Assembly: GCF_031769215.1 (NCBI RefSeq)
Contig: NW_026781965.1
Location: 3,658,001 to 3,722,000, forward strand
Direction: 5' to 3'
Length of the DNA stretch: 64,000 nt
Source of the DNA: Ylistrum balloti
Lineage: Eukaryota
Part shown: positions 1,760-49,700 of the stretch, one piece after another
Layout of the letters: every line of letters begins with the position of its first letter
How positions within the stretch are numbered: position 1 is the first letter of the stretch
The notes under the pieces: model-generated
Database searches by the model: none
Seen by the model: the letters and a program-made list of their open reading frames with translations, nothing else
What the model was told of the DNA's origin: nothing
Position numbers and translations under genes: made by a program

Positions 1760-1920
1760 TATATCAAGTGGTAGTCAGAATTTTACATTATCATTTTTAT
1801 ATTACAAAAGGACATACAATAGACATACTTAACAATGCGTTAAGACGGCGTCGGTGTTGTTTAAGTTCTCCACATAATACATTTAAATACATGGTATATA
1901 CACACACTGTATATATAAAT

Positions 1921-17767: not shown

Positions 17768-17906
17768 NNNNNNNNNNNNNNNNNNNNNNNNNNNNNNNNN
17801 NNNNNNNNNNNNNNNNNNNNNNNNNNNNNNNNNNNNNNNNNNNNNNNNNNNNNNNNNNNNNNNNNNNNNNNNNNNNNNNNNNNNNNNNNNNNNNNNNNNN
17901 NNNNNN
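17768..17906. other. Assembly gap (139 N)
   Basis: Run of N. Confidence 1.
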
Positions 17907-26077: not shown

Positions 26078-27861
26078 TTGTGTCCATTTGACACTAGTAC
26101 GTCGAAGTTAAATTGGCATTCATTGAAAGAAAAATCTGGGTAAAATGGAGACACTTGTTGGAGACGTCCTGTTATTTTAGTTTATTAAATAGAAACAATT
26201 TCAGTATTCGACAAGTTTTTCTTGGTCAAAGCAGCCGACGTTTTTGAAAATGTTCATTTTTCTATCCATTTTCCTTCATTTATTTCTTTTCCTCCACCAC
26301 CAGTTCACGAGGACCTGTACCGCCAGACGTCGTGTTTTCTTTTTAGGTATTACTACACAGAGGTAGGTCAACTTTGTTTTGAAAAGAATAATATATATGT
26401 AAATTTAGCCACACTACATATATATATACTGTAAATAATAACGAAATCGTGACATATGCTATTTGATAACAATTTCTTTTCTGAGGTATACAGTTGTTTT
26501 GACATTAAACCGTCAGATCGTTTAACCACAGGTGATTAAAGGTACACACATATAGTATAAAAATAGATGTATCCTTACTGTCTCGTTCATCACACGGTTA
26601 CCTCGCCTTATCCGTGTGTCACAGAAGTGGAACTATGGTTTTAAATTGTTAACAACATACGACCTCTAGCTCTTGACGTAATAAAGGGCAAATATTTGCG
26701 GGTAAATTAAGGATATCGTGGTGTTTTGCGTGCCATAATGAGGACAAAATGACAAAATTAATTGTTAGGGGACCGCTTAAATGACAGAGATGTGTCGTCA
26801 GAAGAATCACTTAATTGATTTTTTTAGTCGTTTTATGAACATCAACTGAAATTAGAAACATCGTTTTTACAGCATAGACCTATAACGTACAACTAAACAA
26901 GAAAACCGTGTTCTACTCTGTATTAATCCATACAAAATTTCTTCTAGGAGATTCGATTCACTTCAGGTTTTGTGGATTTATTTTAACGTGAATTCTAACA
27001 CCACCTCAAAACATGGATTTTATGTTGATTGTACTTGATTGATCTCTATAATTAAGATATTATCTTCACAAAATCATGCTTAAATCATAACACAAATATA
27101 TTTTTCGCTGCCCCATGGTCTGGAATTTGTCCAATTTGACAACGGATTGGTGTAGTTTACGCCGACCCTGAGTTTGATGATTACATGTATTCTAAATCAA
27201 AATGCGTCATTAGTAACTTACTGGTTTGATGTTTTTAAATGTCACGTTCAGATTCAAGATTTAAGTTCAAATCACAATGGTCATGTGGAGATAGTATCTA
27301 ACGGTTGGGCACGGCAAATTCAGAGTCCAGATATGTCATTGTTTCCACGGTACAAAACCATTAACAATAACCGAGGTTAAACAAACTTTCCGGATTTGGG
27401 TCCAACATTTGTTTTGAATTCTGATCCCAATTAAAGTCAGTTATCTTGGCATCTAGGGCGACACGTAGAGGTAGCCCTAAACCATGTTTATAACGTTAAT
27501 TGTACTTAGTGGCGCAGTAGGTCAGTGGTTGTTTCCAGAATATAAGATAAGTGTCTTCAGTATATGAGATACACTATGTGTAAATAACCAAAAAGGGCGT
27601 TTTCAAATATGTACAAAAGACCGAAATGATTTGAACTCAGATATTAATTCATGCACATTTACGTCAGAACTGGTATTAGGCGAGGTGAAATAGTTTATAC
27701 ATACGGCCAATCTGTCTTTGATGTTGATGATAGACATTTTTCACTGCACATCTTATCGTCCATATCTGTAGTATTCTAGTCAAAATCGTGACCCAACTTC
27801 AAGTTCTTTATTACATAAAGTCGACTGACTCATCAGATACAGGAAAGTAACAACATAATAC

Positions 27862-29219
27862 ATAACAATATACAAACACATGACTACAGACACAATATAT
27901 ATATAACAATATACAAACACATGACTACAGACACAATATATATATAACAATATACAAACACATTATTACAGACACAATATATATATATAGCAATATACAA
28001 ACACATGACTACAGACACAATATATATATATATATAACAATATACAAACACATTATTACTGACACAATATATATATATAACAATATACAAACACATTATT
28101 ACAGACACAATACTTATATATAACAATATACAAACACATTATTACAGACACAATACTTATATATAACAATATACAAACACATTATTACAGACACAATATA
28201 TATATATAACAATATACAAACACATGACTACAGACACAATATATATATAACAATATACAAACACATGACTACAGACACAATATATATATAACAATATACA
28301 AACACATGACTACAGACACAATATATATATATAACAATATACAAACACATTATTACAGACACAATATATATATATAACAATATACAAACACATTATTACA
28401 GACACAATATATATATATAACAATATACAAACACATGACACAATATATATATAACAATATACAGACACAATATATATATATAACAATATACAAACACATT
28501 ACAGACACAATATATATATATAACAATATACAAACACATGACTACAGACACAATATATATATATATAACACATGACTACAGACACAATATATATATATAT
28601 ACAAACACATTATTACAGACACAATATATATATATAACAATATACAAACACATTATTACAGACACAATATATATATATAACAATATACAAACACATTATT
28701 ACAGACACAATATATATATATATAACAATATACAAACACATTATTACAGACACAATACATATATAACAATATACAAACACATTACTGACACAATATATAT
28801 ATAACAATATACAAACACATGACTACAGACACAATATATATATATAACAATATAAAAACACATTATTACAGACACAATATATATATATACAATATACAAA
28901 CACATTACTGACACATATATATATATAACAATATACAAACACATTACTACAGACACAATATATATATAACAATATACAAACACATTATTACAGACACAAT
29001 ATATATATATATATAACAATATACAAACACATTATTACAGACACATATATATATATATAACAATATACAACACATATGACTACAGACACATATATATATA
29101 TATATAACAATATACAAACACATTATTACAGACACAATATATATATAACAATATACAAACACATTATTACAGACACAATATATATATATATAACAATATA
29201 CAAACACATTATTACAGAC

Positions 29220-29250
<31 letters not shown>

Positions 29251-30684
29251 CAATATACAAACACATATATTACAGACACAATATATATATATATATATAA
29301 CAATATACATATAACAATATACACACATATTACAGACACAATATATATATATATAACACATATACAAACAATATATATACATACAAACACATACAGACAC
29401 AATATATATATAACAATATACAAACACATGACTACAGACACAATATATATATATAACAATATACAAACACATGACTACAGACACAATATATATATATAAC
29501 AATATACAAACACATCATTATAGCCACAATATATATATATAACAATATATATATATACAAACACATGACTACAGACACATATATATATATAACAATATAC
29601 AAACACATGACTACAGACACATATATATATATATAACAATATATATATAAACATATACAAACACATTACAGACACAATATATATATAACAATATACAAAC
29701 ATATCATTACAGACACAATATATATATAACACATATACAAACATATATATAACAATATACAGACACAATATATATATATAACAATATACAAACACATTAT
29801 TACAGACACATATATATATATATAACAATATACAAACACATTATTACAGACACAATATATATATAACAATATAAAAACACATTACAGACACAATATATAT
29901 ATAACAATATACAAACACATGACTACAGACACAATATATATATATAACAATATACAAACACATATATATATAGACACAATATATATATATATAACACATT
30001 ATATATATATATAACAATATACAAACACATATTACAGACACAATATATATATATAACAATATATATATATACACAATATATATATATATAACAATATACA
30101 AACACATTATTACAGACACATATATATATATATAACAATATACAAACACATTATTACAGACGATATATATATATATATAACACATATACAAACACAATAT
30201 ATATATAACAATATACTGACACAATATATATATAACAATATACAAACACATGACTACAGACACAATATATATATATAACAATATACAAACACATTATTAC
30301 AGACACAATATATATATAACAATATACAAACACATTACTGACACAATATATATATATATATAACACATATACAAACACAATATATATATGATATACAGAC
30401 ACAATATATATATAACAATATACAAACACATTATTACAGACACAATATATATATATAACAATATACAAACAATATATATATATATACAGACACAATATAT
30501 ATATATAACAATATACAAACACATGACTACAGACACATATATATATATATATATATAACAATATATATATATATACAAACACATAATTACAGACACATAT
30601 ATATATATAATATATACAAACACATATATATACAAACACAATATATATATATATATAACAATATACAAACACATTATTACAGAC

Positions 30685-30715
<31 letters not shown>

Positions 30716-31571
30716 CAATATACAAACACATGATTACAGACACAATATATATATAACAATATACAAACACATTACTGACACAATATATATATAACAATAT
30801 ACAAACACATGACTACAGACACAAGATATATATAACAATATACAAACACATGACTACAGACACAATATATATATAACAATATACAAACACATGACTACAG
30901 ACACAAGATATATATAACAATATACAAACACATCATTACAGACACATATATATATATAACAATATACAAACACATGACTACAGACACAATATATATATAT
31001 ATATATATATATAACAATATACAAACAATATATATATATATATGACTACAGACACATATATATATATAACAATATACAAACATATCATTACAGACACAAT
31101 ATATATATAACAATATACAAACATATCATTACAGACACAATACATATATAACAATATACAAACACATGACTACAGACACAATATATATATATAACAATAT
31201 ACAAACACATTATTACAGACACAATACATATATATAACAATATACAAACACATCATTACAAACACAATATATATATAACAATATAAAAACACATTATTAC
31301 AGACACAATATATATATATATATATATAACAATATACAAACACATGACTACAGACACAATATATATATATAACAATATACAAACACATTATTACAGACAC
31401 AATATATATATATATAACAATATACAAACACATTATTACAGACACAATACATATATAACAATATACAAACACATCATTACAGACACAATACATATATAAC
31501 AATATACAAACACATCATTACAGACACAATACATATATAACAATATACAAACACCTGTTTACAGACACAAT
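27862..31571. repeat. AT-rich ~41-45-bp satellite with embedded variable (AT)n
   Basis: Unit aacaatatacaaacacat(gac/tat)tacagacacaat(at)n. Source of the many YI/CV-rich ORFs. Confidence 0.97.
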
Positions 31572-32539: not shown

Positions 32540-33350
32540 ATCAACGGGAAAGAGGAAACCGATGAGAGGCATGACGTCAAATGACAAATGACTAGAGGCA
32601 TGACGTGAAAAGACAAGAGAAAGACAAAAAGGCGATGACGACAGACATGACGTCAAAAGGAAAGACAAAGGGTCGTGACGAAAGAGAGAAAGAGAGACTA
32701 GTAAGCGCTTGCCCCCAAGAGGGAATATACTCAGTAAAGGCAATGGCTAGAAGTGTGACGTCAAGAGAAAATGTGATGACTAGAGGCGCGACATGAAGAA
32801 AGAGATAGGCGATGAGTAAAGATGTGACGTCAAGGGAAAGGCGGTAACTAGAGGGGCGACATGAAGAAAGAGATAGGCGATGAGTAAAGATGTGACGTCA
32901 AGGGAAAGGCGGTAACTAGAGGCGCGACATGAAGAAAGAGATAGGCGACGAATAAAGATGTGACGTCAAGCGAAAGGCGATGACTAGAGGCGCGGCATCA
33001 AAGAGAAAGAAAGGCGACGAATAAAGATGTGACGTCAAGCAAAAGGCGATGACTAGAGGCGTGACATCAAAAAAAAAAAAAAAAAAAAAGGCGATGAGTA
33101 AAGATGTGACGTCAAGCGAAAGGCGATGACTAGAGGCACGACATCAAAGAAAAAGAAAGGCAACGAATATAGATGTGGCGTCGAAAGAAAGGCGATGACT
33201 AGAGGCGTATCACCAGGAGAAATATTTGAATTACATTACTTTCGTGTACATAAAAAATTTGCTATAAGAAACTTGGCGTCCATAGACAGAGAAGAGTGAT
33301 GACAAGTGATGTGACGCCAAGAAAAAGAGAAAGGCGATGATTATAGGCGT
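32540..33350. repeat. ~68-bp purine-rich tandem repeat carrying TGACGTCA motifs
   Basis: TGACGTCA at 32572, 32648, 32756, 32825, 32893, 32961, 33030 and 33107. Spacing in the core is 68-69 bp. Confidence 0.9.
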
Positions 33351-35242
33351 GCCGCTAACGGAAAAAGGAAAAAAGTAGAAACAAGTACGTTTACAACGAG
33401 AAAAGATAACATGAATATTTTGTCTAATATCAACGAAACCTTCTTCCATGTCACCGGTTTATTCTTCCGGTCCTGATCTTTACTGTTTATTTTTTTCTTG
33501 TTAGGCTGGACAGCTTTCTGTATTTGACAAAGACCGGGCTTTTCTATTGTGATGTCTGGTATCACTACAGAGTTGTGCACATGTTTGTTTCGGTGCTGAC
33601 TTTCAGAACGAAACTTGATACTAGATGTCTGCCATTGTTTATCATTAGTTAAACCATTGACCTCGTTTTTTAATTTATTACCGTTGCTTGGTTTGCTCCA
33701 GTGGCCATTCAGTTGACTGGACCTACCCCCGTCACTGGCGTTTGATATTTTCCTTACACTTTCATCTAGCTTGAAAGAGTCGTTTTCCAATTTTACTTTA
33801 CACATATCTATAGGATTGTCCTCACAAAGAAGTACAGGGGAAACCTTCCTTCCGCGTTTTACATTTGAGTTGTTCGAAGAGACTAAGGAACAGCTTGTCT
33901 GCCTCTCTATAACCACAGATTGACTCTCAATAATTTGTTCTGAATCCTCCTTTGTGATTTCCGATTTGAGGGAAAGTTGGCGGTTAATTTCCGGATACAT
34001 ATACCTTATCTCTGAAGCATTGCTGTCTGGACAAGAAGGACTCCTTTGGGGGTCAATGACTACGTTAGTACTAGACACCGACATCTTGTCTGGGGGAACC
34101 ACCGTTATATGTCTTATATGTTGAGTTTGTTTCTTTCTCTTGGTTTTGTTCACAAAACATGATGTAAGCTTTTGTAAAAATATTGGAATGTTTTTGTTAT
34201 CAGACCTGAAATAGAGAAATATTGAGAAAATAGCGGAGATAGAGACTAGTACACTGTATATCATCTGCCACATGAAGAAGTACCCGAGATAAGTCATTCT
34301 GTCCGAGGCCTTCGGTAGAAACGATATGGAATGGATGAAGTAAAACGATAAGGTTATGAATCCTATGGAGACTAATTGTCCGCGACCTTCCTCAGCAGGA
34401 AGCATAAAAGAACACGTGATCAGTATCGTTATCAGTAGGACAGGAAGGAGCAGGTTGATGACGAAATACACAGGTTTACGTGACATCGTTATCTCAAAAT
34501 GTACATTTGAACTTTGACTCGAAAACGTACCGTATACATTTGACTGGTCGACGTTCCATTCTGTGTTTGTGTTTAGGGAACTGATGTCAATATTTTTTCC
34601 GCTTTCCATGATACCAAGTTTTACTTCACTTGGACTGTATCCCACAATACCAAACGAAACATTACATATTTGGACGTCAAAGGGAAAATATTGAACGTTT
34701 GTCCTGCATAAAGATTGTATCGTTATCCTTGGCTTCCAAATGATGTCACCGCTATTGTTAATCAGAATAATATCACTGCCGGTATGTATCCCACTTATAT
34801 CATCAAATGGGTTAGCGACAACGACCGGTGGTACCCACACGTCTGAAGCACGCATGCGAACAGTCTTTGTGTCCTTAAAAATATCTGAATAGTTTTTCCA
34901 AGATAAAAGTTGGTCCGTCCATCTGACTTCTAAATTACCGACGGTATGAAGGACGCCTAATACACAGTCCAGTTTTGCGATGGAGCGAAGAGTTAAACTT
35001 GCTCGTACGTCCACTCTATCTTCTAAATGTCTGACCGGACGAATATATTTACTATAGTTCAAAAAAATATCAGAATCAAATAGCATTTGCATGGTTTGGC
35101 TTGTCACTGTTGTGAGATTTCCGACAGAAATGTATGTACTGAGGACAAAACATGTCAACAGCATTGGCGAGTACAGCACAGAAGGCATCGGGGGCCCGTG
35201 TAGTTCTCCTCCAAAACTCAGCATGCTATTATGGCAAAACAT
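33341..35242 (-). CDS. Highly divergent nAChR-like Cys-loop subunit G2 (up to 633 aa, intronless CDS, long M3-M4 loop)
   Basis: Cys loop CRTNVQYFPFDVQIC, WVPP loop A, RKPVYF pre-M1, four TM segments. The true start may be the ATG at 35188 or 35164, ahead of the hydrophobic signal segment. Confidence 0.93.
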   Translation of the reverse strand: MFCHNSMLSFGGELHGPPMPSVLYSPMLLTCFVLSTYISVGNLTTVTSQTMQMLFDSDIFLNYSKYIRPVRHLEDRVDVRASLTLRSIAKLDCVLGVLHTVGNLEVRWTDQLLSWKNYSDIFKDTKTVRMRASDVWVPPVVVANPFDDISGIHTGSDIILINNSGDIIWKPRITIQSLCRTNVQYFPFDVQICNVSFGIVGYSPSEVKLGIMESGKNIDISSLNTNTEWNVDQSNVYGTFSSQSSNVHFEITMSRKPVYFVINLLLPVLLITILITCSFMLPAEEGRGQLVSIGFITLSFYFIHSISFLPKASDRMTYLGYFFMWQMIYSVLVSISAIFSIFLYFRSDNKNIPIFLQKLTSCFVNKTKRKKQTQHIRHITVVPPDKMSVSSTNVVIDPQRSPSCPDSNASEIRYMYPEINRQLSLKSEITKEDSEQIIESQSVVIERQTSCSLVSSNNSNVKRGRKVSPVLLCEDNPIDMCKVKLENDSFKLDESVRKISNASDGGRSSQLNGHWSKPSNGNKLKNEVNGLTNDKQWQTSSIKFRSESQHRNKHVHNSVVIPDITIEKPGLCQIQKAVQPNKKKINSKDQDRKNKPVTWKKVSLILDKIFMLSFLVVNVLVSTFFLFPLAARL

Positions 35243-35261
35243 TTAGAGGACACCCATAGGG

Positions 35262-35269
35262 TGACGTCA
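35262..35269. promoter_or_regulatory. CRE consensus upstream of G2
   Basis: Perfect TGACGTCA 20 bp upstream of the first ATG. Sequence match only. Confidence 0.3.
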
Positions 35270-35445
35270 TTTCAAATTCCGTCTTCGATATGATTACATG
35301 AGCATTGAGATTGTTCTTTGTAAATAAAAAGGTCGGACAGAAGTTCGAAGCCATAATTGCCGGCTATCAATGGTGTCCGTTACAGGTGTAAGACCCAACA
35401 CCCTACTGATCCTCCGTGTTTACAAAACTCCAGGCATATACTATT

Positions 35446-35459
35446 ATGTGACGTCACAT
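35446..35459. promoter_or_regulatory. Extended CRE palindrome upstream of G2
   Basis: 14-bp perfect palindrome ATGTGACGTCACAT. Sequence match only. Confidence 0.35.
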
Positions 35460-35854
35460 TAACACCTTTCTCCTGCTGCGTCCTACCGTTAAACCTGCCA
35501 GGTGAGGCGTGCGTAATGTCTCCTGATCTACAGGTAGGTATTGTTGATAAAAACCTACCGGGTCAACAAAGGTCGATAAAAATGAAAGATACGGAGTTAT
35601 CATTTCATCACCGGGCGTTTCGGGTATAATTAATGCATTTTTGATCCCAGAGAAAAATCTAGATCTCCGTTATGATACGCATTTTGACGCATTACACACA
35701 AATATGTACGGCTGAACAATGAAAGGAGAAAATCGAACACGAAGCTTGAACCATTCAATATGCTTTTCTTAAACCACGGAGTACACTAAGAGACAACTCC
35801 TAATAAAAAGATAGTTTGACATATCGATTTACATATTCATGAATAAATGAAATA

Positions 35855-38437
35855 ATGGTGTTATGTAGACTAATGGTGATATATAGACTAATGGCGATAT
35901 ATAGACTAATATTGATGTGTAGACTAATGGTGATATGTCGACTAATATTGATGTGTAGACTAATGGTGATATGTCGACTAATGGTGATGTGTAGACTAAT
36001 GGTGATATGTAGACTAATGGTGATGTGTAGACTAATGGTGATGTGTAGACTAATGGTGATGTGTGGACTAATGGTGATATGTCGACTAATATTGATGTGT
36101 AGACTAATGGTGATATGTCGACTAATGGTGATGTGTAGACTAATGATGATATGTAGACTAATGTTGATATGTAGACTAATGGTGATGTGTAGACTAATGG
36201 TGATATGTAGACTAATGGTGATATGTAGACTAATGGTGATGTGTAGACTAATGGTGATGTGTAGACTAATGGTGATGTGTAGACTAATGGTGATATATAG
36301 ACTAATGGTGATATGTAGACTAATGGTGATGTGTAGACTAATGGTGATGTGTAGACTAATGGTGATATATAGACTAATGTTGATATGTAGACTAATGGTG
36401 ATGTGTAGACTAATGTTGATGTGTAGACTAATGGTGATATATAGACTAATGGTGATATGTAGACTAATGGTGATGTGTAGACTAATGGTGATATATAGAC
36501 TAATGGTGATATATAGACTAATGGTGATATATAGACTAATGGTGATGTGTAGACTAATGGTGATGTGTAGACTAATGGTGATATATAGACTAATGGTGAT
36601 GTGTAGACTAATGGTGATATATAGACTAATGGTGATATATAGACTAATGGTGATGTGTAGACTAATGGTGATATGTAGACTAATGGTGATAAATAGACTA
36701 ATGGTGATGTGTGGACTAATGGTGATATATAGACTAATGGTGATATATAGACTAATGTTGATATGTAGACTAATGGTGATGTGTAGACTAATGGTGATGT
36801 GTAGACTAATGGTGATATGTAGACTAATGGTGATATGTAGATAATGTAGACTAATGGTGATGTGATATATAGACTAATGGTGATATATAGACTAATGGTG
36901 ATGACTAATGGTGATATATAGACTAATGGTGATATGTAGACTAATGGTGATGTGTAGACTAATGGTGATATATAGACTAATGGTGATATATAGACTAATG
37001 GTGATATATAGACTAACTTTTATATGTAGACTAATGGTGATGTGTAGACTAATGGTGATATGTAGACTAATGGTGATATATAGACTAATGGTGATGTGTA
37101 GACTAATGGTGATATGTAGACTAATGGTGACTAATGGTGATATAGACTATAGACTAATGGTGATATATAGACTAATGGTGATATGTAGACTAATGTGATA
37201 TATGATATGATATATAGACTAATGTTGATATATAGACTAATGTTGATATGTAGACTAATGTTGATATATAGACTAATGGTGATGTGTAGACTAATGGTGA
37301 TATATAGACTAATGGTGATATATAGACTAATGGTGATATATAGACTAATGGTGATATGTAGACTAATGGTGATGTGTAGACTAATGGTGATATATAGACT
37401 AATGGTGATATGTAGACTAATGGTGATATGTAGACTAATGGTGATGTGTAGACTAATGGTGATGTGTAGACTAATGATATGATATATGGTGATATGTAGA
37501 CTAATGGTGATATATAGACTAATGGTGATATGTAGACTATATGGTGATATATAGACTAATGTGTGGTGATATATAGACTAATGGTGATATATAGACTAAT
37601 GGTGATATGTAGACTAATGGTGATATGTAGACTAATGGTGATATATAGACTAATGTTGATATATAGACTAATGTTGATATGTAGACTAATGTTGATATAT
37701 AGACTAATGGTGATGTGTAGACTAATGATGTGTAGACTAATGGTGATATATAGACTAATGGTGATATATAGACTAATGGTGATATATAGACTAATGGTGA
37801 TATGTAGACTAATGGTGATATGTAGACTAATGGTGATATATAGACTAATGGTGATATGTAGACTAATGGTGATATATAGACTAATGGTGATATGTAGACT
37901 AATGGTGATATATAGACTAATGGTGATGTGTAGACTAATGGTGATATATAGACTAATGGTGATATGTAGACTAATGGTGATATGTAGACAAATGGTGATA
38001 TGTCGACTAATGGTGATATATAGACTAATGGTGATGTGTAGACTAATGGTGATATATAGACTAATGGTGATATATAGACTAATGGTGATGTGTAGACTAA
38101 TTGTGATATGTAGACTAATATATAGACTAATGATATATAGACTAATGGTGATATGTAGACTAATGGGTGACTAATGGTGATATATGGTGATATATAGACT
38201 AATGGTGATATGTAGACTAATTTGATATGTAGACTATGTGTAGACTAATGATATGTAGACTAATGGTGATACTAATAGACTAATGGTGATATGTAGACTA
38301 ATGGTGATGTGTAGACTAATGGTGATATGTAGACTAATGGTGATGTGTAGACTAATGGTGATATATAGACTAATGGTGATATGTAGACTAATGGTGATGT
38401 GTAGACTAATGGTGATATGTAGACTAATGGTGATGTG
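35855..38437. repeat. 18-bp minisatellite, ~140 copies
   Basis: Unit tagactaatggtgat(a/g)t(g/a). Gives the RLMVIC ORFs. Confidence 0.97.
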
Positions 38438-38970
38438 TTGTCTTCTGTCCCTATTGATATACATATACAGACCTTCACTTTTCCTCATGTCCTCTGCTTT
38501 CCTGCTTGACTATACACATTAAATTGTTATTGATATAGCTATAAGGACGGCTTTGATGAAGATGTCATGTATAATCAGGACAAATAACCACCACAAGGAA
38601 GACTTTTACACATTTATTTAATCAATAACGTACCGCGGCATGTACAGGTTGAATGACACGACGGTATTGTAGTGTAACAGGAGGCGGGGGATAGTCTAAA
38701 GTCTCTCTCTGGTGACAATTCAAGCTGATATCCGGGAACACGATTCATACTTTTCAGTTCGAAACATTAATTCTGTAAAATATTCATAAGATATCTTTAG
38801 ATTCTAAGTTAGCTTGCTAGCATGGAACGAGTCCTTCCGGAAAACGTAATCAGATAAGTAAAGTCTTTGATATTGATCTTCCCACCTCCAAGATGTACCA
38901 GAGGTTGTTCTCAAAATATCACGTCTGTGTTCGATATGTTACAGAGCACTACACACAGATGTTTGTACTT

Positions 38971-39708
38971 CTAACCCTCTAGTCCGGCTACAACAAGCGG
39001 GTACATGAAGAAAACCGTGATACCCAGCGACAGGAAGAAAAAGAATATAAAAGAGAATCCGTCCAAAGCCCCGCCCACCATCCTCCATGTAATTCCTCTA
39101 ATGTCTCTATCATCTACTGGCGCCTGGATACTGTCAACTTCGGCGTCGCTGTTGTCATCCTCATCGTCGTTATCGATAATGTCTGTCACTGCGTTCCTAC
39201 TCGCCTTCTTTTTGCTGCACCATTTTTTACATTTTCGGCATGTCATGAATGCAACGAGATGACGTACTCCCTCTGGGGGTGTGGCCTCCTCGTCCTGATG
39301 GTAAACTCTTAATATCAGAATCGTTGCTATTGTAATGAGGGAACTGACGAATAACATCAGAGTGAGGAAGTAACAGAGCAGCGACATTGGTTCAGAGGCT
39401 TTGGGCAAGTTTTCTGCCACCATCGTCAGAAACACAGCGAAAGTCAAGAACGCCGTAATGGCGTAACCGACACGTTCGCCACAGTCAGCCGGAAGTAGAA
39501 ATACCAAACCATTGAGGAGTCCAATAATAAGGATTGGAATGATCATGTTGACTAGGAAATAACCCGGCTTCCGGGAGAGATTTAGAGTGAAGACGACATA
39601 CGACACGTCCGCGATAACGGTACTCATCACAGAAGTCGTATCCAAGCTCCATTCAACATTCTCCATGTAAAGGGACATGTCAATTTCGTTTGATGAATTC
39701 AGGACAAT
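38971..39708 (-). CDS. nAChR-like subunit G3, coding exon 2 (loop C, M1-M4)
   Basis: Acceptor ttttttgtttAG|ATT at 39709/39708 is in frame with track ORF 38971..39678. M2 GERVGYAITAFLTFAVF. Confidence 0.93.
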   Translation of the reverse strand: MVLNSSNEIDMSLYMENVEWSLDTTSVMSTVIADVSYVVFTLNLSRKPGYFLVNMIIPILIIGLLNGLVFLLPADCGERVGYAITAFLTFAVFLTMVAENLPKASEPMSLLCYFLTLMLFVSSLITIATILILRVYHQDEEATPPEGVRHLVAFMTCRKCKKWCSKKKASRNAVTDIIDNDDEDDNSDAEVDSIQAPVDDRDIRGITWRMVGGALDGFSFIFFFFLSLGITVFFMYPLVVAGLEG

Positions 39709-40131
39709 CTAAACAAAAAAAGGTAGTAATAACAATGTAAACCAGCGCAATAAGTTAGCATCAACAGAAACTCGTCATCCGAGTATAAATTATTTCATAT
39801 CCGTGGAGAAATTAACCAAATGATTATCGTTCTTTATTGAACAGTTTTATCGTCTACTTTTAAAATGACGAGGGAGATGAAGTATGCCGTTAATGATAAC
39901 TGTGATTGGTTGAGATCTTACCTCGGGCTTGGGGTTGATATTGTGTTCTAACCTTACACTGACCAGTTGTTAGATGGAAATATGTTACAAGGAAATTTAA
40001 TGTAATCTCATTCTTACAGTTCATCCAGAAAGAGGCCAAATGTCAAAAACGTAGGATTAAGAACCCCCCAGTTAATTGGCCAGATTTATTTGGCCCTTTC
40101 TATGGAGGGATATGACGTAACTGTCTTTTAC
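39709..40131 (-). other. G3 intron (423 nt, phase 0, GT-AG)
   Basis: CAG|GTAAAA ... tttAG|ATT. Splicing restores GYVKDQ|IVLNSSNEIDMS, colinear with the intronless paralogs. Confidence 0.9.
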
Positions 40132-40674
40132 CTGATCCTTCACGTAGCCCAGCGCCGCAAATGTGACATTGCATGACTGTTTGTCGAAAGGATAGAGTGT
40201 GACGTCAACGCCACATGACGTTCGTGCGACTAAGCCGACATTCCAGATAGCATTACCCTCATAGTCGATCCGAATTTTGTATGCTGAGTCCCCAAGTTCC
40301 GTTAGGGAGTCGACAGAGTTGGTGAGAGTGACCGGGGGTTTCCAGAATGTTTCCTGCGGTAACAACAGGTTCTCCATTGGATTGTCATCTACTAGGTTCC
40401 ACGTTAGAAGTTCATTCCTCCACCGTATCACAGCTAATCCCACTATAGCCAAGTTTCCGTTCAACTCATCAAAGTCCGTCACTCCGACCAATGTAAACTC
40501 AATGTCAACGTCTAAATGTTCAATTTGGTATATCTTTGGAAATATTTTGCTATTGTAGCTCCTAAACGGTTCATTGTCCAAGAATTCTTTGAAGTTTGTA
40601 CTTGTAGCAGAGAAAACACTTTCAATATTCCATAAACTAACACAAAGAACGACCACAATCCAGTGACTCGCCAT
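40132..40674 (-). CDS. nAChR-like subunit G3, coding exon 1 (joined protein 426 aa)
   Basis: ATG 40674 (MASHWIVVVLCVSLW, signal peptide). Cys loop CGVDVTLYPFDKQSC. Confidence 0.93.
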
Positions 40675-41452
40675 TTTGAATTCGCTAACCAAATATCATG
40701 ACGTAGAATGAATGTTTGAAAATGTGTTTTACGTGAAATAAGACAATCGACTTCTCTAATGCAGAGACTATATTGCCATACGCGGTTAACATTAGCAAAT
40801 ATGACGATTTTGCGCATGCGTGCGACCTAATTAAATGTTGTAAAGTATATGTACCCATCTGACAATGATATCATTTACGGGTTGTATATAAATCTATGAT
40901 ACCTATCTAACGAACAAAGGCGGTCGTGATACGGAACGCTAGACTCGCCTTGCAATAACACCACTAGGCTTTGGTCAAAGCACCAAGTCTATAACCTTAA
41001 ATATATACTCATTTAAAACAGTTATGAAAATGGCTGCATTGTGATTCTTAAATGAAGACCTACTTGTACAAAATCAGTGAAAAATCGGTTGTATTTTTCA
41101 TTTTTTTTCAGTAAAGGGCCTACAAAATTAAGAAGTGTGACCCGGGTTTGACGTACATATGCTACTGACGGCGATAAACAATACTATGAAATCATATATT
41201 TCGTGGTGTTTGATTTTCGCGGTGTTTTAAAAACTTTTTCGTGGACTCTTGATTTTTCTGTGGATATATGAATTCGCGAGTTGAGAATCTCCTATGACAA
41301 ATAGTAATTTTACAAAGGAACAGAACCCTAAACAACAAACTAGAATTTTACTACAAATGCTTAATAAAGCCTTGAAAATATGTATATCAATATCGTGGAA
41401 GTAAACTTCTTATCTTGTGGCTTTAACTGACTATTGAGGAAATAAACGCAAC

Positions 41453-41742
41453 ATTACACGAGAGCGTACACATAGGTGTATTTATATATATAGCGTTACA
41501 CGATAGTGTACACATAGGTTAAGATATATACAACGTTACACGATAGTGTACACATAGGTTAAGATATATACAACGTTACACGATAGTGTACACATAGGTG
41601 TAGATATATACAGCGCTACACGAGAGTGTACACATAGGTGTAGATATATACAGCGTTACACGATAGTGTACACATAGGTGTAGATATATACAACGTTACA
41701 CGATAGTGTACACATAGGTGTAGATATACACAGCGTTACACG
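41453..41742. repeat. 40-bp minisatellite, ~7 copies
   Basis: Unit cgttacacgatagtgtacacataggtgtagatatatacag. Confidence 0.93.
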
Positions 41743-42997
41743 ACTGTAGTGAACAGAGATACACTGTAGTGAACAGAGACACACTGTAGTGACAGAGACA
41801 CACTGTAGTGAACAGAGACATACTGTAGTGAACAGAGATACACTGTAGTGAACAGAGATACACTGTAGTGAACAGAGACACACTGTAGTGAACAGAGATA
41901 CACTGTAGTGAACAGAGATACACTGTAGTGAACAGAGACACACTGTAGTGAACAGAGACACACTGTAGTGAACAGAGACATACTGCAGAGACACACTGTA
42001 GTGAACAGAGACACACTGTAGTGAACAGAGATACACTGTAGTGAACATTGTACAGAGATACACTGTAGTGAACAGAGATACACTGTAGTGAACATGTACA
42101 GAAATACACTGTAGTGAACAGAGATACACTGTAGTGAACATTGTACAGAGATACACTGTAGTGAACAGAGATACACTGTAGTGAACAGAGACACACTGTA
42201 GTGAACAGAGATACACTGTAGTGAACAGATATACACGGTAGTGAACAGAGACACACTGTAGTGACAGAGACACACTGTAGTGAACAGAAATACACTGTAG
42301 TGAACAGAGACATACTACAGAGACACACTGTAGTGAACAGAGACACACTGTAGTGAACAGAGATACACTGTAGTGAACATTGTACAGAGATACACTGTAG
42401 TGAACAGAGATACACTGTAGTGACAGAGACACACTGTAGTGAACAGAGATACACTGTAGTGAACAGAGATACACGGTAGTGAACAGAGACACACTGTAGT
42501 GAACAGAGATACACTGTAGTGAACAGAGATACACTGTAGTGAACAGAGACACACTGTAGTGAACAGAGACACACTGTAGTGAACAGAGACACACTGTAGT
42601 GAACAGAGACACACTGTAGTGAACAGAGACACACTGTAGTGAACAGAGACACACTGTAGTGAACAGAGACACACTGTAGTGAACAGAGACACACTGTAGT
42701 GAACAGAGACACACTGTAGTGAACAGAGATACACTGTAATGAACATTGTACAGAGATACACTGTAGTGAACAGAGATACACTGTAGTGTACATGTACAGA
42801 GATACACTGTAGTGAACAGAGATACACTGTAGTGTACATGTACAGAGATACACTGTAGTGAACAGAGATACACTGTAGTGAACATTGTACAGAGATACAC
42901 CGTAGTGAACATTGTACAGAGATACACTGTAGTGAACAGAGATACACCGTAGTGAACATTGTACAGAGATACACTGTACACTGTACACTGTACACTG
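41743..42997. repeat. 20-bp minisatellite, ~60 copies
   Basis: Unit cactgtagtgaacagaga(c/t)a. Confidence 0.96.
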
Positions 42998-44323: not shown

Positions 44324-45115
44324 TTATTCTTCATCGGAGGAAGAGGAGGTCGCAGCTACGGCGAGAGGAATCAAGAACACACATGAAATGACGACGGTCC
44401 CGAAAACGAACAACGAGAAGAAAAATCCGTCCAGTGTGCCCCCGACCACCCGCCATGTTATACCTTTTATATCAGCATTGTTTGGCTTGGCTTTTTTCAC
44501 CTCCGTCTTCCGTTTCCCTTCATCGTCTGAATCTTCCTCCTCTTCCTCCTCCGACGACGATTCTTCTTCCTCTACTTCCTGTCCCGGTTTGGGTTCTTCT
44601 ATAGCCTCCAGCTTTTGTCCACACCACTTCTTACACTTTCTGCAGGTAATGAATGCCACCACGTGTTTTAGCCACATGGGTACTGGGCTGTCATCATCCT
44701 GGTGATACACTCGTAGTGTCATGATAGTAATCACGGTCGATAAGGCGCTCATAATCAACATCAACGTCAGGAAGAAGCATAGCAGAGACATTGGTTCAGA
44801 AGATTTGGGAAGGTTATCAGACACCATGGTCAAAAACACAGCAAATGTGAGGAAAGCGGTGATAGCATACCCAACGCGTTCACCGGAATCAGCCGGGAGA
44901 AGGAATACCAGACCGTTAAGCATACCGAGGATAAGAATGGGAATGATCATGTTAACCAGAAAGTAGCCCGGTTTCCGAGCCAGATTAAGGGAGTAATCGA
45001 GGTAGGAGGCCGAGGCGGAGGAGAGCGCTTCCACGGTGGTGCTAGTCAAAGTCCATTCCACGTTCGGCATGAAAAGATCGGTGTTCATACCTGTACTGGT
45101 AGTGTTTAGTCGAAC
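44324..45115 (-). CDS. nAChR-like subunit G4, coding exon 2
   Basis: Acceptor ctgtttcAG|GTT at 45116/45115 is in frame with ORF 44324..45088. M1-M4 present. Confidence 0.93.
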   Translation of the reverse strand, partial: VRLNTTSTGMNTDLFMPNVEWTLTSTTVEALSSASASYLDYSLNLARKPGYFLVNMIIPILILGMLNGLVFLLPADSGERVGYAITAFLTFAVFLTMVSDNLPKSSEPMSLLCFFLTLMLIMSALSTVITIMTLRVYHQDDDSPVPMWLKHVVAFITCRKCKKWCGQKLEAIEEPKPGQEVEEEESSSEEEEEEDSDDEGKRKTEVKKAKPNNADIKGITWRVVGGTLDGFFFSLFVFGTVVISCVFLIPLAVAATSSSSDEE

Positions 45116-46156
45116 CTGAAACAGTTAACATTATTAATAAGTACCCCGACCCTAGTTGATGCTGTATGTCATACGTGTAACAGTAACGAGCCTAATTAGG
45201 ACTCAAAGTTAATATTAACGAACAGCCGTAAATGTACACTAGCCAAAAGAATACCCCGAGTTGATGCTAATTTTGTCACACCTGTTATCATAAATAAATG
45301 TACTTGATGCTAATTTTGTCACACCTGTTATCATAAAAAAGAATACCCCGAGTTGATGCTAATTTTGTCACACCTGTTATCATAAATGAGCCAAGATGAT
45401 ACCCCGACTTGATGCTAATTTTGTCACACCTGTTATCATAAATGAGCCAAGATGATACCCCGACTTGATGCTAATTTTGTCACACCTGTTATCATAAATG
45501 AGCCAAGATGATACCCCGAGTTGATACTAATTTTGTCACACCTGTTATCATAAATGAGCCAAGATGATACCCAGACTTGATGCTAATTTTGTCACACCTG
45601 TTATCATAAATGAGCCAAGATGATACCCCGACTTGATGCTAATTTTGTCACACCTGTTATCATAAATGAGCCAAGATGATACCCAGACTTGATGCTAATT
45701 TTGTCACACCTGTTATAATAAATGAGCCAAGATGATACCCCGAGTTGATGCTAATTTTGTCACACCTGTTATCATAAATGAGCCTAGATAATACCCCGAG
45801 TTGATGCTGATTTTGTCACACCTGTTATCATAAATGAGCCAAGATGATACCCCGACTTGATGCTAATTTTGTCACACCTGTTATCATAAATGAGCCAAGA
45901 TGATACCCGGACTTGATGCTAATTTTGTCACACCTGTTATCATAAATGAGCCAAGATGATACCCCGAATTGATGTTAATTTTGTCACATCTGTTATCATA
46001 CATGAGCCAAGATAATACCCCGAGTTGATGCTAATTTTGTCACACCTGTTATCATAAATGAGCCTAGATAATATCCCGAGTTGATGCTAATTTTCTCACA
46101 TCTATAACGCTTTCTGAGAGGCACAAAGAAGAGGTAGTGTTATTTAGTTTAGTTAC
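45116..46156 (-). other. G4 intron (1041 nt, phase 0, GT-AG)
   Basis: CAG|GTAACT ... ttcAG|GTT. Same codon position as the G3 intron. Confidence 0.9.
45248..46100. repeat. 56-bp minisatellite inside the G4 intron, ~15 copies
   Basis: Unit ataccccgagttgatgctaattttgtcacacctgttatcataaatgagccaagatg. Confidence 0.96.
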
Positions 46157-48446: not shown

Positions 48447-49700
48447 TTAATTAGAAACTTGTTGCACTTTGATGTAAAAGACAAGTGACACACATAAATA
48501 GATTATCCAATAAGTCATAAAGAAGATCTTGTCCAACGCTTTCCCGATCATTTCCCCATCATATTCATTTACAGACTTGTCACCAGTCCGGTCTTCACTA
48601 CTCGCGGTGCCGGATTCTCTATTGGTCACAGACATTTTTCCTATTTCGACATCTTTTTTAGGACCGCTGAAATACCCAAACCGACTACAATTTGTTATGT
48701 CCACCAGTGTTTTTAAGTACTTTGGTACTGGTAAATTTCTTTTTTCGAAATGAAACCTTAAATTGAACACAGTGGCAAAAGTTATTGTAGAACTCAGAAG
48801 TAACATAATCAGCATATAGTAGGAAAGAAGAGGCATCGGGAACGAGGCTTGAGGTAAGCTTGCACTCATCAAGCTGAGGAAGACGGCAAATGTGAGGAAG
48901 GCAGCAATAGCATAGCCTACTCGTTCACCGGTATTCGATGGTAACAGAAACACAAGTGTGTTCAGAATCGCCAACAGAAAAATAGGCAGTGCCATGTTTA
49001 TCATGAAAAATGTTGGTTTTCGAGCAAGTGAAATTGTAAATAACAAGAAGGCTTGTCTTCTTACGACCCTCATGCTGACTTCCGTTTCCGTTACATTCCA
49101 CTCTTCACTGCCGACAAATTCATCTGTCAGAAAGCCCGATTCGTGCATGTTGAAATCTATTTCGGTATTGATGTAACTCATTGGAGTTAAAATCAAGGTG
49201 CATTTCTGAACGTCAAATGGGTAGTTTGTAGCATCAACGGCGCACCCCGTCCTACTCACCATCCCGAATGCCCATGTTACGTCTCCAGAAGTCATGTCAA
49301 TGCGAACATTATGGAAACCCTGTCCCAAGGTCGATGCCATTGAATCCACGGAATTGAATATGGAAATTGTTGGAGTCCAAATAAATTCCGATGGAAACGA
49401 GAGTTGTTGAAATATATGATGAGATTTGTTGAATGTTGCGGTGACAAGTTCGTCGTTCCAGTGCATTTGAATGTTACCAACCATGTTTAGATGTCCAGTT
49501 ATCTCGTCAAAGTGGGTAATGGCGGCTATGCTGAAGGACAGCGCTATCTCTACTGGGCGCGACTGGTTATGACGGGGGAATACATTATTACTATACGGAC
49601 ATAAAGAACAAAACGTTCGGTTTACAAAGTCCAGGACGGTGTCCGTCGTTTGTCCGATACACGGGACTGTACACAGGTATATCAATAGAAGCATATACAT
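48447..49700 (-). CDS. nAChR-like subunit G5 (417 aa, intronless CDS)
   Basis: Signal peptide, Cys loop CAVDATNYPFDVQKC, M2 GERVGYAIAAFLTFAVF, four TM segments. Confidence 0.95.
   Translation of the reverse strand: MYMLLLIYLCTVPCIGQTTDTVLDFVNRTFCSLCPYSNNVFPRHNQSRPVEIALSFSIAAITHFDEITGHLNMVGNIQMHWNDELVTATFNKSHHIFQQLSFPSEFIWTPTISIFNSVDSMASTLGQGFHNVRIDMTSGDVTWAFGMVSRTGCAVDATNYPFDVQKCTLILTPMSYINTEIDFNMHESGFLTDEFVGSEEWNVTETEVSMRVVRRQAFLLFTISLARKPTFFMINMALPIFLLAILNTLVFLLPSNTGERVGYAIAAFLTFAVFLSLMSASLPQASFPMPLLSYYMLIMLLLSSTITFATVFNLRFHFEKRNLPVPKYLKTLVDITNCSRFGYFSGPKKDVEIGKMSVTNRESGTASSEDRTGDKSVNEYDGEMIGKALDKIFFMTYWIIYLCVSLVFYIKVQQVSN

What the first reader, a model, noticed from the sequence alone, without database searches (positions are those of the whole stretch)
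34313..34966. G2 has a rewritten pore and has lost the gating Glu, yet keeps a 633-codon ORF
Seen: the M1-M2 linker LPAEEGR is one residue shorter than LPADCGER of its neighbours. Anchoring on F8'-x-T10' and P23' gives G-1' (not E), Q2', I6', I9', F13' and H17'. The beta1-beta2 loop reads LDCV where G1, G3 and G5-G7 have DE and G4 has NE. Established: E-1' sets cation selectivity, 2' and 6' are normally small polar residues, and the beta1-beta2 Glu (E45) pairs with the pre-M1 Arg to couple binding to gating. Inference: G2 may be a non-conducting, gating-silent or selectivity-altering modulatory subunit.
Basis: partly seen in the sequence, partly recalled or inferred. Interest (0 to 1): 0.75.

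Follow-up and report, generated by a model that had tools for sequence, protein, structure and literature searches.

The report
Scallop receptor subunit with rewritten pore
One gene in a scallop cluster of nicotinic-type receptor genes is intact and kept by selection in at least three scallop genera, although nearly every pore-lining residue and the usual acetylcholine-binding residues have been replaced; no experiment yet shows what it does.

Summary
G2 (33341-35242, minus strand) is a single 633-codon ORF for a Cys-loop receptor subunit. Its M1-M2 linker is one residue shorter than its neighbours', with Gly at -1' and Arg at 0'. The pore reads Q2', I6', I9', F13', I16', H17', and the beta1-beta2 loop has Cys where the others have Glu.

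- **Not a pseudogene.** Syntenic orthologues exist in Mizuhopecten and Argopecten. dN/dS is 0.20-0.25 overall and 0.02-0.05 in M1-M3, with dS of 0.8-1.5. About 300 bases upstream, including a cAMP-response element, are also conserved.
- **The change is pore-specific.** G2's M2 is 14% identical to 125 relatives, against 34-49% for ordinary members. Its extracellular domain is no more divergent than theirs.
- **Two of the "losses" are not unique.** Gly at -1' occurs in 7 of 126 relatives and arose several times in bivalves. About a quarter of relatives lack the beta1-beta2 Glu.
- **A Glu remains at -2'**, where the bacterial channel GLIC has its charged ring.
- **"Gating-silent" is not favoured.** The interface between the extracellular and membrane domains is among the best conserved parts, and the ligand-site loops among the least.

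Most likely G2 is a pore-modifying accessory subunit. No expression or functional data were obtainable. Other notes of this scan report pore-limited gene conversion in other receptor clusters of this genome, not this feature.

The parts
33341..35242 (-). G2 open reading frame, 633 codons plus stop at 33341-33343. The likely true start is Met19, at 35186-35188.
34961..34972 (-). Beta1-beta2 loop LDCV (residues 91-94). Cys93 replaces the Glu45-equivalent. LDCVLGV is identical in all orthologues.
34664..34708 (-). Cys-loop, Cys179 to Cys193 (C-x13-C), intact.
34478..34480 (-). Pre-M1 Arg255, retained; Arg in all 127 relatives.
34403..34471 (-). M1 helix (residues 258-280); 22 of 23 residues identical in three orthologues.
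34382..34402 (-). M1-M2 linker LPAEEGR (residues 281-287), one residue short: E-3', E-2', G-1', R0'. Identical in all orthologues.
34313..34384 (-). M2 pore helix from R0' (287) to P23' (310): Q2', I6', I9', T10', F13', I16', H17', S20'.
34289..34315 (-). M2-M3 loop (residues 310-318) with no proline. 113 of 127 relatives have Pro at 28' or 30'.
34211..34288 (-). M3 helix (residues 319-344); 24 of 26 residues identical in three orthologues.
33449..34210 (-). Long intracellular M3-M4 domain (about 254 residues). Mostly disordered in the model and fast-evolving (dN/dS 0.3-0.4), with short conserved islands.
33344..33448 (-). MA/M4 helix (residues 599-633).
35243..35541 (-). Conserved upstream block, 75-81% identical across three scallop genera. 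It holds a perfect cAMP-response element (TGACGTCA) at 35449-35456, a second at 35262-35269 and a TATA-like run at 35316-35330. Probably the promoter.

Best explanation
G2 is an intact, intronless, nicotinic-type Cys-loop receptor subunit that selection has maintained. In the data searched it is found only in scallops.

It probably branched from a bivalve group of subunits that had already lost the -1' residue of the M1-M2 linker. It then went through a burst of change that replaced almost every pore-lining residue of M2, the beta1-beta2 Glu and the M2-M3 proline. It has been held nearly constant since.

It has none of the aromatic residues of a canonical acetylcholine site, and its ligand-site loops drift freely. 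Its membrane domain and the interface between the extracellular and membrane domains are strongly conserved.

Inferred mechanism: G2 is an accessory, non-ligand-binding subunit that co-assembles with ligand-binding partners. There it contributes a more hydrophobic pore wall (I6', I9', F13', I16'), no outer acidic residue (S20') and an inner Glu moved to -2'. This would lower conductance, alter permeation and stabilise the closed state.

Shown here: gene integrity, orthology, selection, the residue pattern and the register. Inferred: co-assembly and the effect on current.
For: - **Family and fold.** Pfam ligand-binding domain 5e-39; the membrane domain is just over its cut-off. The model superposes on Torpedo and human nicotinic receptor chains at about 2 A rmsd over about 330 columns.
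- **Orthologues and synteny.** Mizuhopecten yessoensis has the G3 orthologue upstream of the G2 orthologue. Argopecten irradians keeps the order G6-G5-G4-G3-G2 with an intact 612-codon ORF.
- **Selection.** dN/dS is 0.20-0.25 overall and 0.02-0.05 in M1-M3, where synonymous sites are near saturation (pS 0.49-0.69). The neighbour G3 has dS 1.03 over the same species pair, so the divergence time is the same.
- **Pore-specific rewriting.** M2 identity to the family is 0.14, against 0.34-0.49 for ten control members. Extracellular-domain identity is 0.26, against 0.25-0.29.
- **Burst, then stasis.** The stem is 0.97 changes per site and the crown 0.13-0.18.
- **Conservation by element.** M1 0.96, linker 1.00, M3 0.92, pre-M1 0.90, M2 0.82, beta1-beta2 loop 0.78, Cys-loop 0.73, against loop C 0.42, loop F 0.36 and the intracellular domain 0.27.
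- **No canonical ligand site.** Loop A Tyr is Ala, loop B Trp is Val, loop C Tyr and the paired Cys are absent, and the position five residues before the conserved beta2 Trp, which I count as the alpha7 loop D Trp, is Asn.
- **Literature.** GLIC has its charged ring at -2'. GLIC mutants at Ser6' (Gly, Val and even Thr) reach the surface but give no current, while mixed pentamers conduct at reduced conductance (PMC3590989).
- **Regulated gene.** The upstream block with a cAMP-response element is conserved.
Against: - No RNA evidence. No RNA run for this species is indexed, and the control stretch over G5-G6 found none either.
- No gene is called at the G2 orthologue's place in the Argopecten record, and G2's protein is absent from the protein collection although this genome's G7 is present.
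- Within-species differences are almost all non-synonymous: 7 to 1 in this species, and 6 plus a two-codon indel to 0 in Argopecten. This could mean recently relaxed constraint. None lies in M1-M3 or the domain interface, and four of the six Argopecten changes are G>T, which may be sequencing damage.
- Partners, assembly and currents are untested.
- Strong conservation of the lumen-facing residues would fit a homomeric channel equally well.
Confidence: 0.5

Rival explanations
1. G2 forms its own homomeric channel, or pairs only with close kin. It would be gated by an unknown non-cholinergic stimulus, as octopus chemotactile receptors and other orphan nicotinic-like receptors may be, and the unusual pore would give special permeation or gating.
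For: All lumen-facing positions (-2', 2', 6', 9', 13', 16', 20') are invariant in the orthologues, and the domain interface is highly conserved. The gene is intronless, tandemly clustered and lacks acetylcholine-site residues, as reported for cephalopod chemotactile receptors (PMC13174522, PMC10338036). The annelid orphan Alpo4 also has an extra hydrophobic constriction, Met16'.
Against: Loop C, loop F and the loop A and D pocket positions are among the least conserved parts, which is unexpected for a specific ligand site. A ring of five Ile6' plus Phe13' would probably not wet: in GLIC, changing Ser6' to Gly, Val or Thr abolished current.
Confidence: 0.25
2. G2 is a non-conducting subunit that acts as a dominant-negative or as a trafficking or scaffolding partner. 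Its main output would be the long intracellular domain rather than ion flow.
For: A four-ring hydrophobic pore wall and no outer acidic ring. An unusually long intracellular domain, about 254 residues, with short conserved islands that include basic-x-Ser sites. No orthosteric-site residues.
Against: The intracellular domain is the fastest-evolving part (dN/dS 0.3-0.4; 27% of its columns invariant), while M1-M3 and the linker are nearly frozen. That is hard to explain if the pore did not matter.
Confidence: 0.15
3. G2 is a gene that has recently been released from constraint and is beginning to decay.
For: Within-species differences are 13 non-synonymous to 1 synonymous when the two species are pooled. 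This fits neutrality (p 0.15) and does not fit the long-term ratio (p 4e-4). No gene model is on record for it in two annotated scallop genomes.
Against: Four intact ORFs of 612-635 codons in three genera, with no stop or frameshift. M1-M3 dN/dS is 0.02-0.05. The promoter block is conserved. No polymorphism lies in M1-M3 or the domain interface. The sample is tiny and may include errors.
Confidence: 0.05
4. G2 is an anion-selective nicotinic-type subunit, like those described in the snail Lymnaea.
For: No Glu at -1', Arg kept at 0', and no acidic residue at 20'.
Against: The linker is shorter, not longer. There is no Pro-Ala-Arg motif, and two Glu sit at -3' and -2'. A 2026 preprint treats PAR-type motifs as the anion signature in molluscs (PMC13174522).
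Confidence: 0.05

Closest known systems
Expanded intronless nicotinic-receptor-like genes of bivalves (Jiao et al. 2019, PMC6896357)
   Same: An intronless gene in a tandem array of receptor-like genes in a bivalve, with a divergent ligand-binding domain. That paper reports 99-217 such genes per bivalve genome.
   Different: The paper does not mention the pore (0 hits for 'pore', 'selectivity' or 'TM2'). G2's M2 is far outside the family range.
Bivalve short-linker subunits with Gly at -1' (for example Crassostrea gigas XP_034312890.1 and Pinctada imbricata KAK3106357.1)
   Same: The same one-residue-short M1-M2 linker ending in Glu-Glu-Gly-Arg, and similar M2-M3 and M3 motifs. They are the nearest group in the tree (SH-aLRT 77).
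   Different: They keep an ordinary M2 (small 2', Leu9', Val13'; 6' is Thr or Gly), and all but P0035 keep the beta1-beta2 Glu and an M2-M3 proline. G2 has lost all three.
Vertebrate accessory and structural nicotinic subunits (muscle gamma/epsilon with Gln at -1'; alpha5, beta3) - from my own knowledge
   Same: Subunits that contribute no principal agonist face, or lack the -1' Glu, yet set the conductance and gating of heteromers.
   Different: Those keep a canonical polar 2' and 6', Leu9' and Val13' pore. G2 does not. G2's co-assembly is untested.
GLIC, the bacterial proton-gated pentameric channel (PMC3590989)
   Same: The charged Glu ring is at -2' rather than -1', with Ile at 9' and 16'.
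   Different: GLIC has Thr2' and Ser6', which are essential for conduction. G2 has Gln2' and Ile6'. GLIC has no Cys-loop and no intracellular domain (my own knowledge).
Alpo4 of Alvinella and the octopus chemotactile receptors (PMC10338036, PMC13174522)
   Same: Lophotrochozoan nicotinic-like orphans; the chemotactile receptors and Alpo4 are described as lacking the common signature ligand motifs. Alpo4 has an extra hydrophobic constriction in the upper pore (Met16'), and no agonist has been found for it.
   Different: Alpo4 keeps Glu-1', Thr2' and the aromatic box. Whether G2 belongs to the chemotactile-receptor clade was not tested.

Membership tests
Cys-loop (pentameric ligand-gated channel) superfamily | Extracellular ligand-binding domain followed by a four-helix membrane domain | tested here: met
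   Pfam PF02931 at 5e-39. PF02932 scores 29.0 bits against a cut-off of 28.1. The model has helices M1-M3 and M4. Foldseek matches nicotinic receptor chains at E about 1e-28.
Cys-loop (pentameric ligand-gated channel) superfamily | Two cysteines 13 residues apart (the Cys-loop) and an invariant pre-M1 Arg | tested here: met
   Cys179, Cys193 and Arg255 are invariant columns.
Acetylcholine-gated nicotinic receptor, alpha type | Adjacent cysteines and two tyrosines in loop C | tested here: not met
   HMMER alignment to Torpedo alpha: Tyr190 is Gly, Cys192-Cys193 are Phe-Ser, and Tyr198 falls in a gap.
Acetylcholine-gated nicotinic receptor, any agonist face | Aromatic box: loop A Tyr, loop B Trp, loop D Trp | tested here: not met
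   Ala143 and Val200 stand at the loop A Tyr and loop B Trp positions. Asn103 stands at the position I count as the loop D Trp. Loop B Trp is present in 91 of 127 relatives.
Cation-selective nicotinic-type pore (GEK/GER motif) | Glu at -1' before the basic 0' residue | tested here: not met
   Gly at -1'. Glu occupies -1' in 118 of 126 relatives. Glu is present at -2' and -3'.
Anion-selective Cys-loop pore (PAR motif) | Pro-Ala-Arg at -2' to 0', with a longer linker | tested here: not met
   The linker is Glu-Gly-Arg and one residue shorter.
Bivalve short-linker clade | Groups with these subunits in a tree built without the linker columns | tested here: inconclusive
   Sister to P0013, P0021, P0030, P0035 and P0042 with SH-aLRT 77 on a long stem. 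One clade of all 11 short-linker sequences is rejected (AU p 0.003).
Cephalopod chemotactile receptors | Membership of that clade, and gating by contact chemicals | not tested
Only the shared traits were seen: intronless, clustered, no acetylcholine-site residues.

The most novel reading that the evidence does not exclude
G2 is a scallop-specific regulatory pore subunit whose transcription is switched on through its conserved cAMP-response element. Once made, it inserts a hydrophobic, low-conductance wall into receptors built from its cluster neighbours. That would be an activity-dependent brake on a whole family of ligand-gated channels, or a channel with a permeation mechanism not seen in animal Cys-loop receptors.
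Probability: 0.12. Interest if true: 0.75.

Novelty: new variant of a known kind. Interest (0 to 1): 0.45.

Why it matters
The rules for conduction and gating in this channel family come from a few vertebrate and bacterial members: a Glu ring at -1', polar 2' and 6', Leu9', Val13', and the beta1-beta2 Glu paired with the pre-M1 Arg.

G2 breaks most of these rules at once. Its membrane domain has nevertheless stayed nearly unchanged while synonymous sites approached saturation. Expressing it, alone and with its neighbours, would test how far those rules can bend. It would also give a first functional handle on the very large, unstudied receptor expansion of bivalves.

It remains one divergent member among hundreds. 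Without current recordings the interest is moderate.

Tried and rejected
- **Mid-M2 gap.** HMMER and MAFFT put the one-residue gap inside M2. I rejected this as an alignment artefact. The model's M2 helix is unbroken, and the short-linker relatives align without an internal gap.
- **Pseudogene.** Rejected on dN/dS, synteny, four intact ORFs and the conserved promoter.
- **Gene conversion as the cause of M1-M3 conservation.** Other notes of this scan report this process elsewhere in the genome. It does not apply here: the conservation is between species, and synonymous sites in M1-M3 differ as much as elsewhere (pS 0.49-0.69).
- **Expression.** Both run searches found only one run. Its contigs cover the flanks at the same depth, so it is genomic DNA. 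Nothing can be said about expression.
- **One origin for all short linkers.** Rejected by the AU test.
- **Wider orthologue search.** A word search limited to M1-M3, and a search of 1.84 billion representatives, found no relative above 34% identity outside scallops.
- **ESM Atlas feature search of M1-M3.** It returned only the generic membrane-domain family.
- **Lymnaea anion-channel paper (PMC6725845).** Not held, so it is cited from memory only.
- **Pentamer model and pore-radius profile.** Not possible: the structure tool folds single chains and returns no coordinates.
Full report
**What is in the window.** A protein-against-DNA search finds seven Cys-loop receptor genes:
- G1 at 23.7-25.1 kb on the plus strand;
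- G2 at 33341-35242, G3 at 39.0-40.7 kb, G4 at 44.3-46.7 kb, G5 at 48447-49700, G6 at 53949-55439 and G7 at 60097-61449, all on the minus strand.

G3 and G4 each have one phase-0 intron at the same place. The other five are single ORFs. G2 is a 633-codon ORF. Pfam finds the ligand-binding domain at 5e-39. The membrane domain scores only 29.0 bits against a cut-off of 28.1, while the neighbours score 63-81 bits. G2 is 25-28% identical to its neighbours. Earlier notes of this scan call the animal a saucer scallop; I did not verify the species. The run of N at 17768-17906 was left alone, and nothing looked human.

**Checking the observation.** Every residue claim holds.
- The linker LPAEEGR (residues 281-287) is one residue shorter than LPADCGER in G3 and the GER linkers of the other neighbours.
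- Counted back from the invariant Pro23' (Pro310), G2 reads E-3', E-2', G-1', R0', G1', Q2', I6', F8', I9', T10', F13', I16', H17', S20'.
- The beta1-beta2 loop reads LDCV where the neighbours have DE or NE. HMMER aligns Cys93 with Glu45 of Torpedo alpha.
- The finding's ends, 34966 and 34313, are exactly the Cys93 and Pro310 codons.

**Register.** HMMER and MAFFT both place the missing residue inside M2. A helix could not tolerate that without turning its lower half. Two results place the deletion in the M1-M2 loop instead.
- The AlphaFold2 model (119-sequence alignment, block-mean pLDDT about 85-95 across the membrane domain) has M1 at 257-280 and one unbroken M2 helix at 287-306 starting at Arg287. 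The model superposes on Torpedo and human nicotinic receptor chains at about 2 A over about 330 columns.
- Several bivalve relatives have the same short linker ending Gly-Arg followed by an otherwise ordinary M2. They align to G2 with no gap inside M2 and share F8', T10', S12', Y14', L22' and P23'.

**How unusual the pore is.** I compared G2 with its 126 closest single-domain relatives, out of the best 150 hits from a search of 1.84 billion representative proteins.

| Position | Usual residue (count of 126) | G2 residue (count of 126) |
|---|---|---|
| -1' | Glu 118 | Gly 7 |
| 2' | Gly or Ser 113 | Gln 0 |
| 6' | Thr 108 | Ile 3 |
| 9' | Leu 121 | Ile 2 |
| 13' | Val 115 | Phe 3 |
| 16' | Thr or Ser 99 | Ile 0 |
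| 17' | Ile 61 | His 0 |
| 20' | Asp or Glu 72 | Ser 19 |

The change is specific to the pore. G2's M2 is on average 14% identical to the family, against 34-49% for ten control members. Its extracellular domain is 26% identical, the same as theirs at 25-29%. "Rewritten pore" is therefore a fair description.

**Parts of the finding that are less special than they look.**
- *Gly at -1'.* Gly at -1' with a linker one residue short occurs in 7 of 126 relatives, among them proteins of Crassostrea gigas, Pinctada imbricata, Argopecten irradians and Sinanodonta woodiana. A tree built without the linker columns puts G2 next to five of them, weakly (SH-aLRT 77). Three others sit elsewhere, one with 99% support. 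A single clade of all eleven is rejected (AU p 0.003). This deletion has therefore arisen several times in bivalves.
- *A Glu remains nearby.* Glu285 sits at -2' and is invariant in all orthologues. In the cation channel GLIC the charged ring is at -2' (PMC3590989). The inner charge may be displaced rather than lost.
- *The beta1-beta2 Glu.* It is missing in 31 of 127 relatives, most often replaced by Ala. Cys there is rare, at most 2 of 127.

**It is a living gene.** The protein collection of 5.8 billion clusters holds two orthologues:
- XP_021374449.1 of Mizuhopecten yessoensis, 635 residues, 62% identical;
- a 614-residue protein from a public run, 55% identical.

In Mizuhopecten the gene lies downstream of the G3 orthologue, which is 92% identical in protein. 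In Argopecten irradians the order G6-G5-G4-G3-G2 is kept, and the G2 orthologue is an intact 612-codon ORF, 98.7% identical to the public-run protein.

| Region (pairwise Nei-Gojobori) | dN/dS |
|---|---|
| Whole gene | 0.20-0.25 |
| Extracellular domain | 0.18-0.21 |
| M1-M3 | 0.02-0.05 |
| Intracellular domain | 0.29-0.41 |

dS is 0.8-1.5. The neighbour G3 has dS 1.03 and dN/dS 0.047 over the same species pair. G2 is therefore the same age as G3 but evolves several times faster in protein outside its membrane core. Synonymous sites inside M1-M3 are as diverged as elsewhere, so the protein conservation there is selection, not recent copying.

In the tree the G2 group sits on a stem of 0.97 changes per site, with a crown of only 0.13-0.18. 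That is a burst followed by stasis.

**Where the constraint lies.** Share of columns identical in three orthologues:

| Element | Identical |
|---|---|
| M1-M2 linker | 1.00 |
| M1 | 0.96 |
| M3 | 0.92 |
| pre-M1 | 0.90 |
| M2 | 0.82 |
| beta1-beta2 loop | 0.78 |
| Cys-loop | 0.73 |
| Loop C | 0.42 |
| Loop F | 0.36 |
| Intracellular domain | 0.27 |

All lumen-facing positions are invariant except 17', which is His in two genera and Tyr in Mizuhopecten. The canonical agonist-site residues are all missing: loop A Tyr is Ala, loop B Trp is Val, loop C Tyr is Gly, the paired Cys are Phe-Ser, and the position I count as the loop D Trp is Asn. Those positions also vary between orthologues.

So selection guards the channel and the domain interface, not a ligand pocket. 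This argues against a decoupled, gating-silent subunit. It fits a subunit that takes part in the pore and in the gating motion but does not bind the agonist.

**Likely mechanism (inferred).** The best fit is an accessory subunit of heteromeric receptors. It would contribute a long hydrophobic wall (I6', I9', F13', I16'), no outer acidic residue, and an inner Glu one position lower. The GLIC work offers an analogy. Mutants at Ser6' (to Gly, Val or Thr) reach the surface but give no current, while mixed pentamers conduct at about half the conductance. By that analogy, five G2 subunits would probably not conduct, and one or two in a heteromer would lower conductance and favour the closed state.

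Rivals are a homomeric channel for an unknown stimulus, a non-conducting partner that works through its long intracellular domain, an anion-selective subunit, and recent decay. They are weighed in their own sections.

**Regulation.** About 300 bases upstream of the start codon are 75-81% identical across the three genera (86-90% in the core), although synonymous sites are only 35-50% identical. The block holds:
- a perfect cAMP-response element (TGACGTCA, 35449-35456) at about the same distance from the start codon in all three species, 207-280 bases upstream;
- a second one at 35262-35269, which is a half-site in the other species;
- a TATA-like run at 35316-35330.

The public-run contig for the Argopecten orthologue begins about 15 bases downstream of that run. 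This would fit a transcript start but proves nothing. The element occurs 14 times in the window against 0.7 expected, and eight of these lie just downstream of G2.

**Open points.**
- No RNA run for this species is indexed. A control search with G5-G6 was equally blank. The one run found is genomic DNA. Expression is therefore unknown.
- G2's protein is absent from the protein collection, although this genome's G7 protein is there. No gene is called at the Argopecten orthologue's place.
- Within-species differences are nearly all non-synonymous: 7 to 1 here, and 6 plus an in-frame two-codon indel to 0 in Argopecten. They lie in the intracellular domain, the signal peptide, extracellular-domain positions outside the interface elements, and M4. 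Pooled, this departs from the long-term ratio (p 4e-4) and fits neutrality. The sample is tiny, and four of the six Argopecten changes are G>T, a pattern typical of sequencing damage.

**What is known.** Jiao et al. 2019 (PMC6896357) described the bivalve expansion of intronless, tandem nicotinic-like genes but did not examine the pore. A 2026 preprint (PMC13174522) sorts molluscan subunits into GEK-type and PAR-type pores; G2 is neither. The annelid orphan Alpo4 (PMC10338036) has an extra Met16' constriction and no known agonist, but keeps Glu-1', Thr2' and the aromatic box. I found no functional study of a bivalve member of this expansion.

**Verdict.** G2 is a new variant of a known kind: a conserved, pore-rewritten orphan subunit. 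It is worth a recording experiment but is not a new class of system.

Noticed in passing
window 32572-33207: Just downstream of G2's stop codon lies a 68-base tandem repeat (6.5 copies, 32754-33207). Each unit carries a perfect cAMP-response element, TGACGTCA. Eight of the window's 14 copies lie at 32572-33107, against 0.7 expected in the whole window. Mizuhopecten has one copy 163 bases past its stop codon.
   Followed up: partly
window 35853-38438; L001:5310-9450: An 18-base minisatellite of about 146 copies lies between G3 and G2, starting about 610 bases upstream of G2. The matching interval in Mizuhopecten holds a similar array (about 70% identity). In the window it reads as a 329-codon ORF of repeated CRLMV-like units, which is an artefact of the repeat.
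   Followed up: partly
window 33341-35242; L003:14905-16743: G2's protein is absent from the protein collection, although this genome's own G7 protein is present. No gene is called at the intact Argopecten irradians orthologue. Only Mizuhopecten has a gene model for it.
   Followed up: partly
window 33441-35124; L003 against L002: Within-species differences in G2 and in its Argopecten orthologue are almost all non-synonymous (7 to 1, and 6 plus a two-codon indel to 0). Silent diversity is very low. Four of the six Argopecten changes are G>T.
   Followed up: partly
window 39679-40150 and 45089-46130: G3 and G4 share a phase-0 intron at the same position, after GY-x-x-x-Q, with GT and AG ends. 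The other five genes have no intron. Another finding of this scan already covers this.
   Followed up: partly
window 27850-31571: An AT-rich tandem array with a 41-43-base period and about 85 copies. GC is about 0.20, with strong strand skew. It lies between G1 and G2.
   Followed up: no
window 16-1832 and 41449-42978: Further minisatellites that read as long false ORFs: repeated MLSVSSLHYTVSY units at 16-1832, and 20- and 40-base units at 41449-42978.
   Followed up: no
G2 residues 379-386 and 558-564 (window about 33551-34107): The fast-evolving intracellular domain holds short islands conserved across genera. They include two similar Val-Val-Pro-Asp-type motifs and Arg/Lys-x-Ser sites that look like kinase targets.
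   Followed up: no
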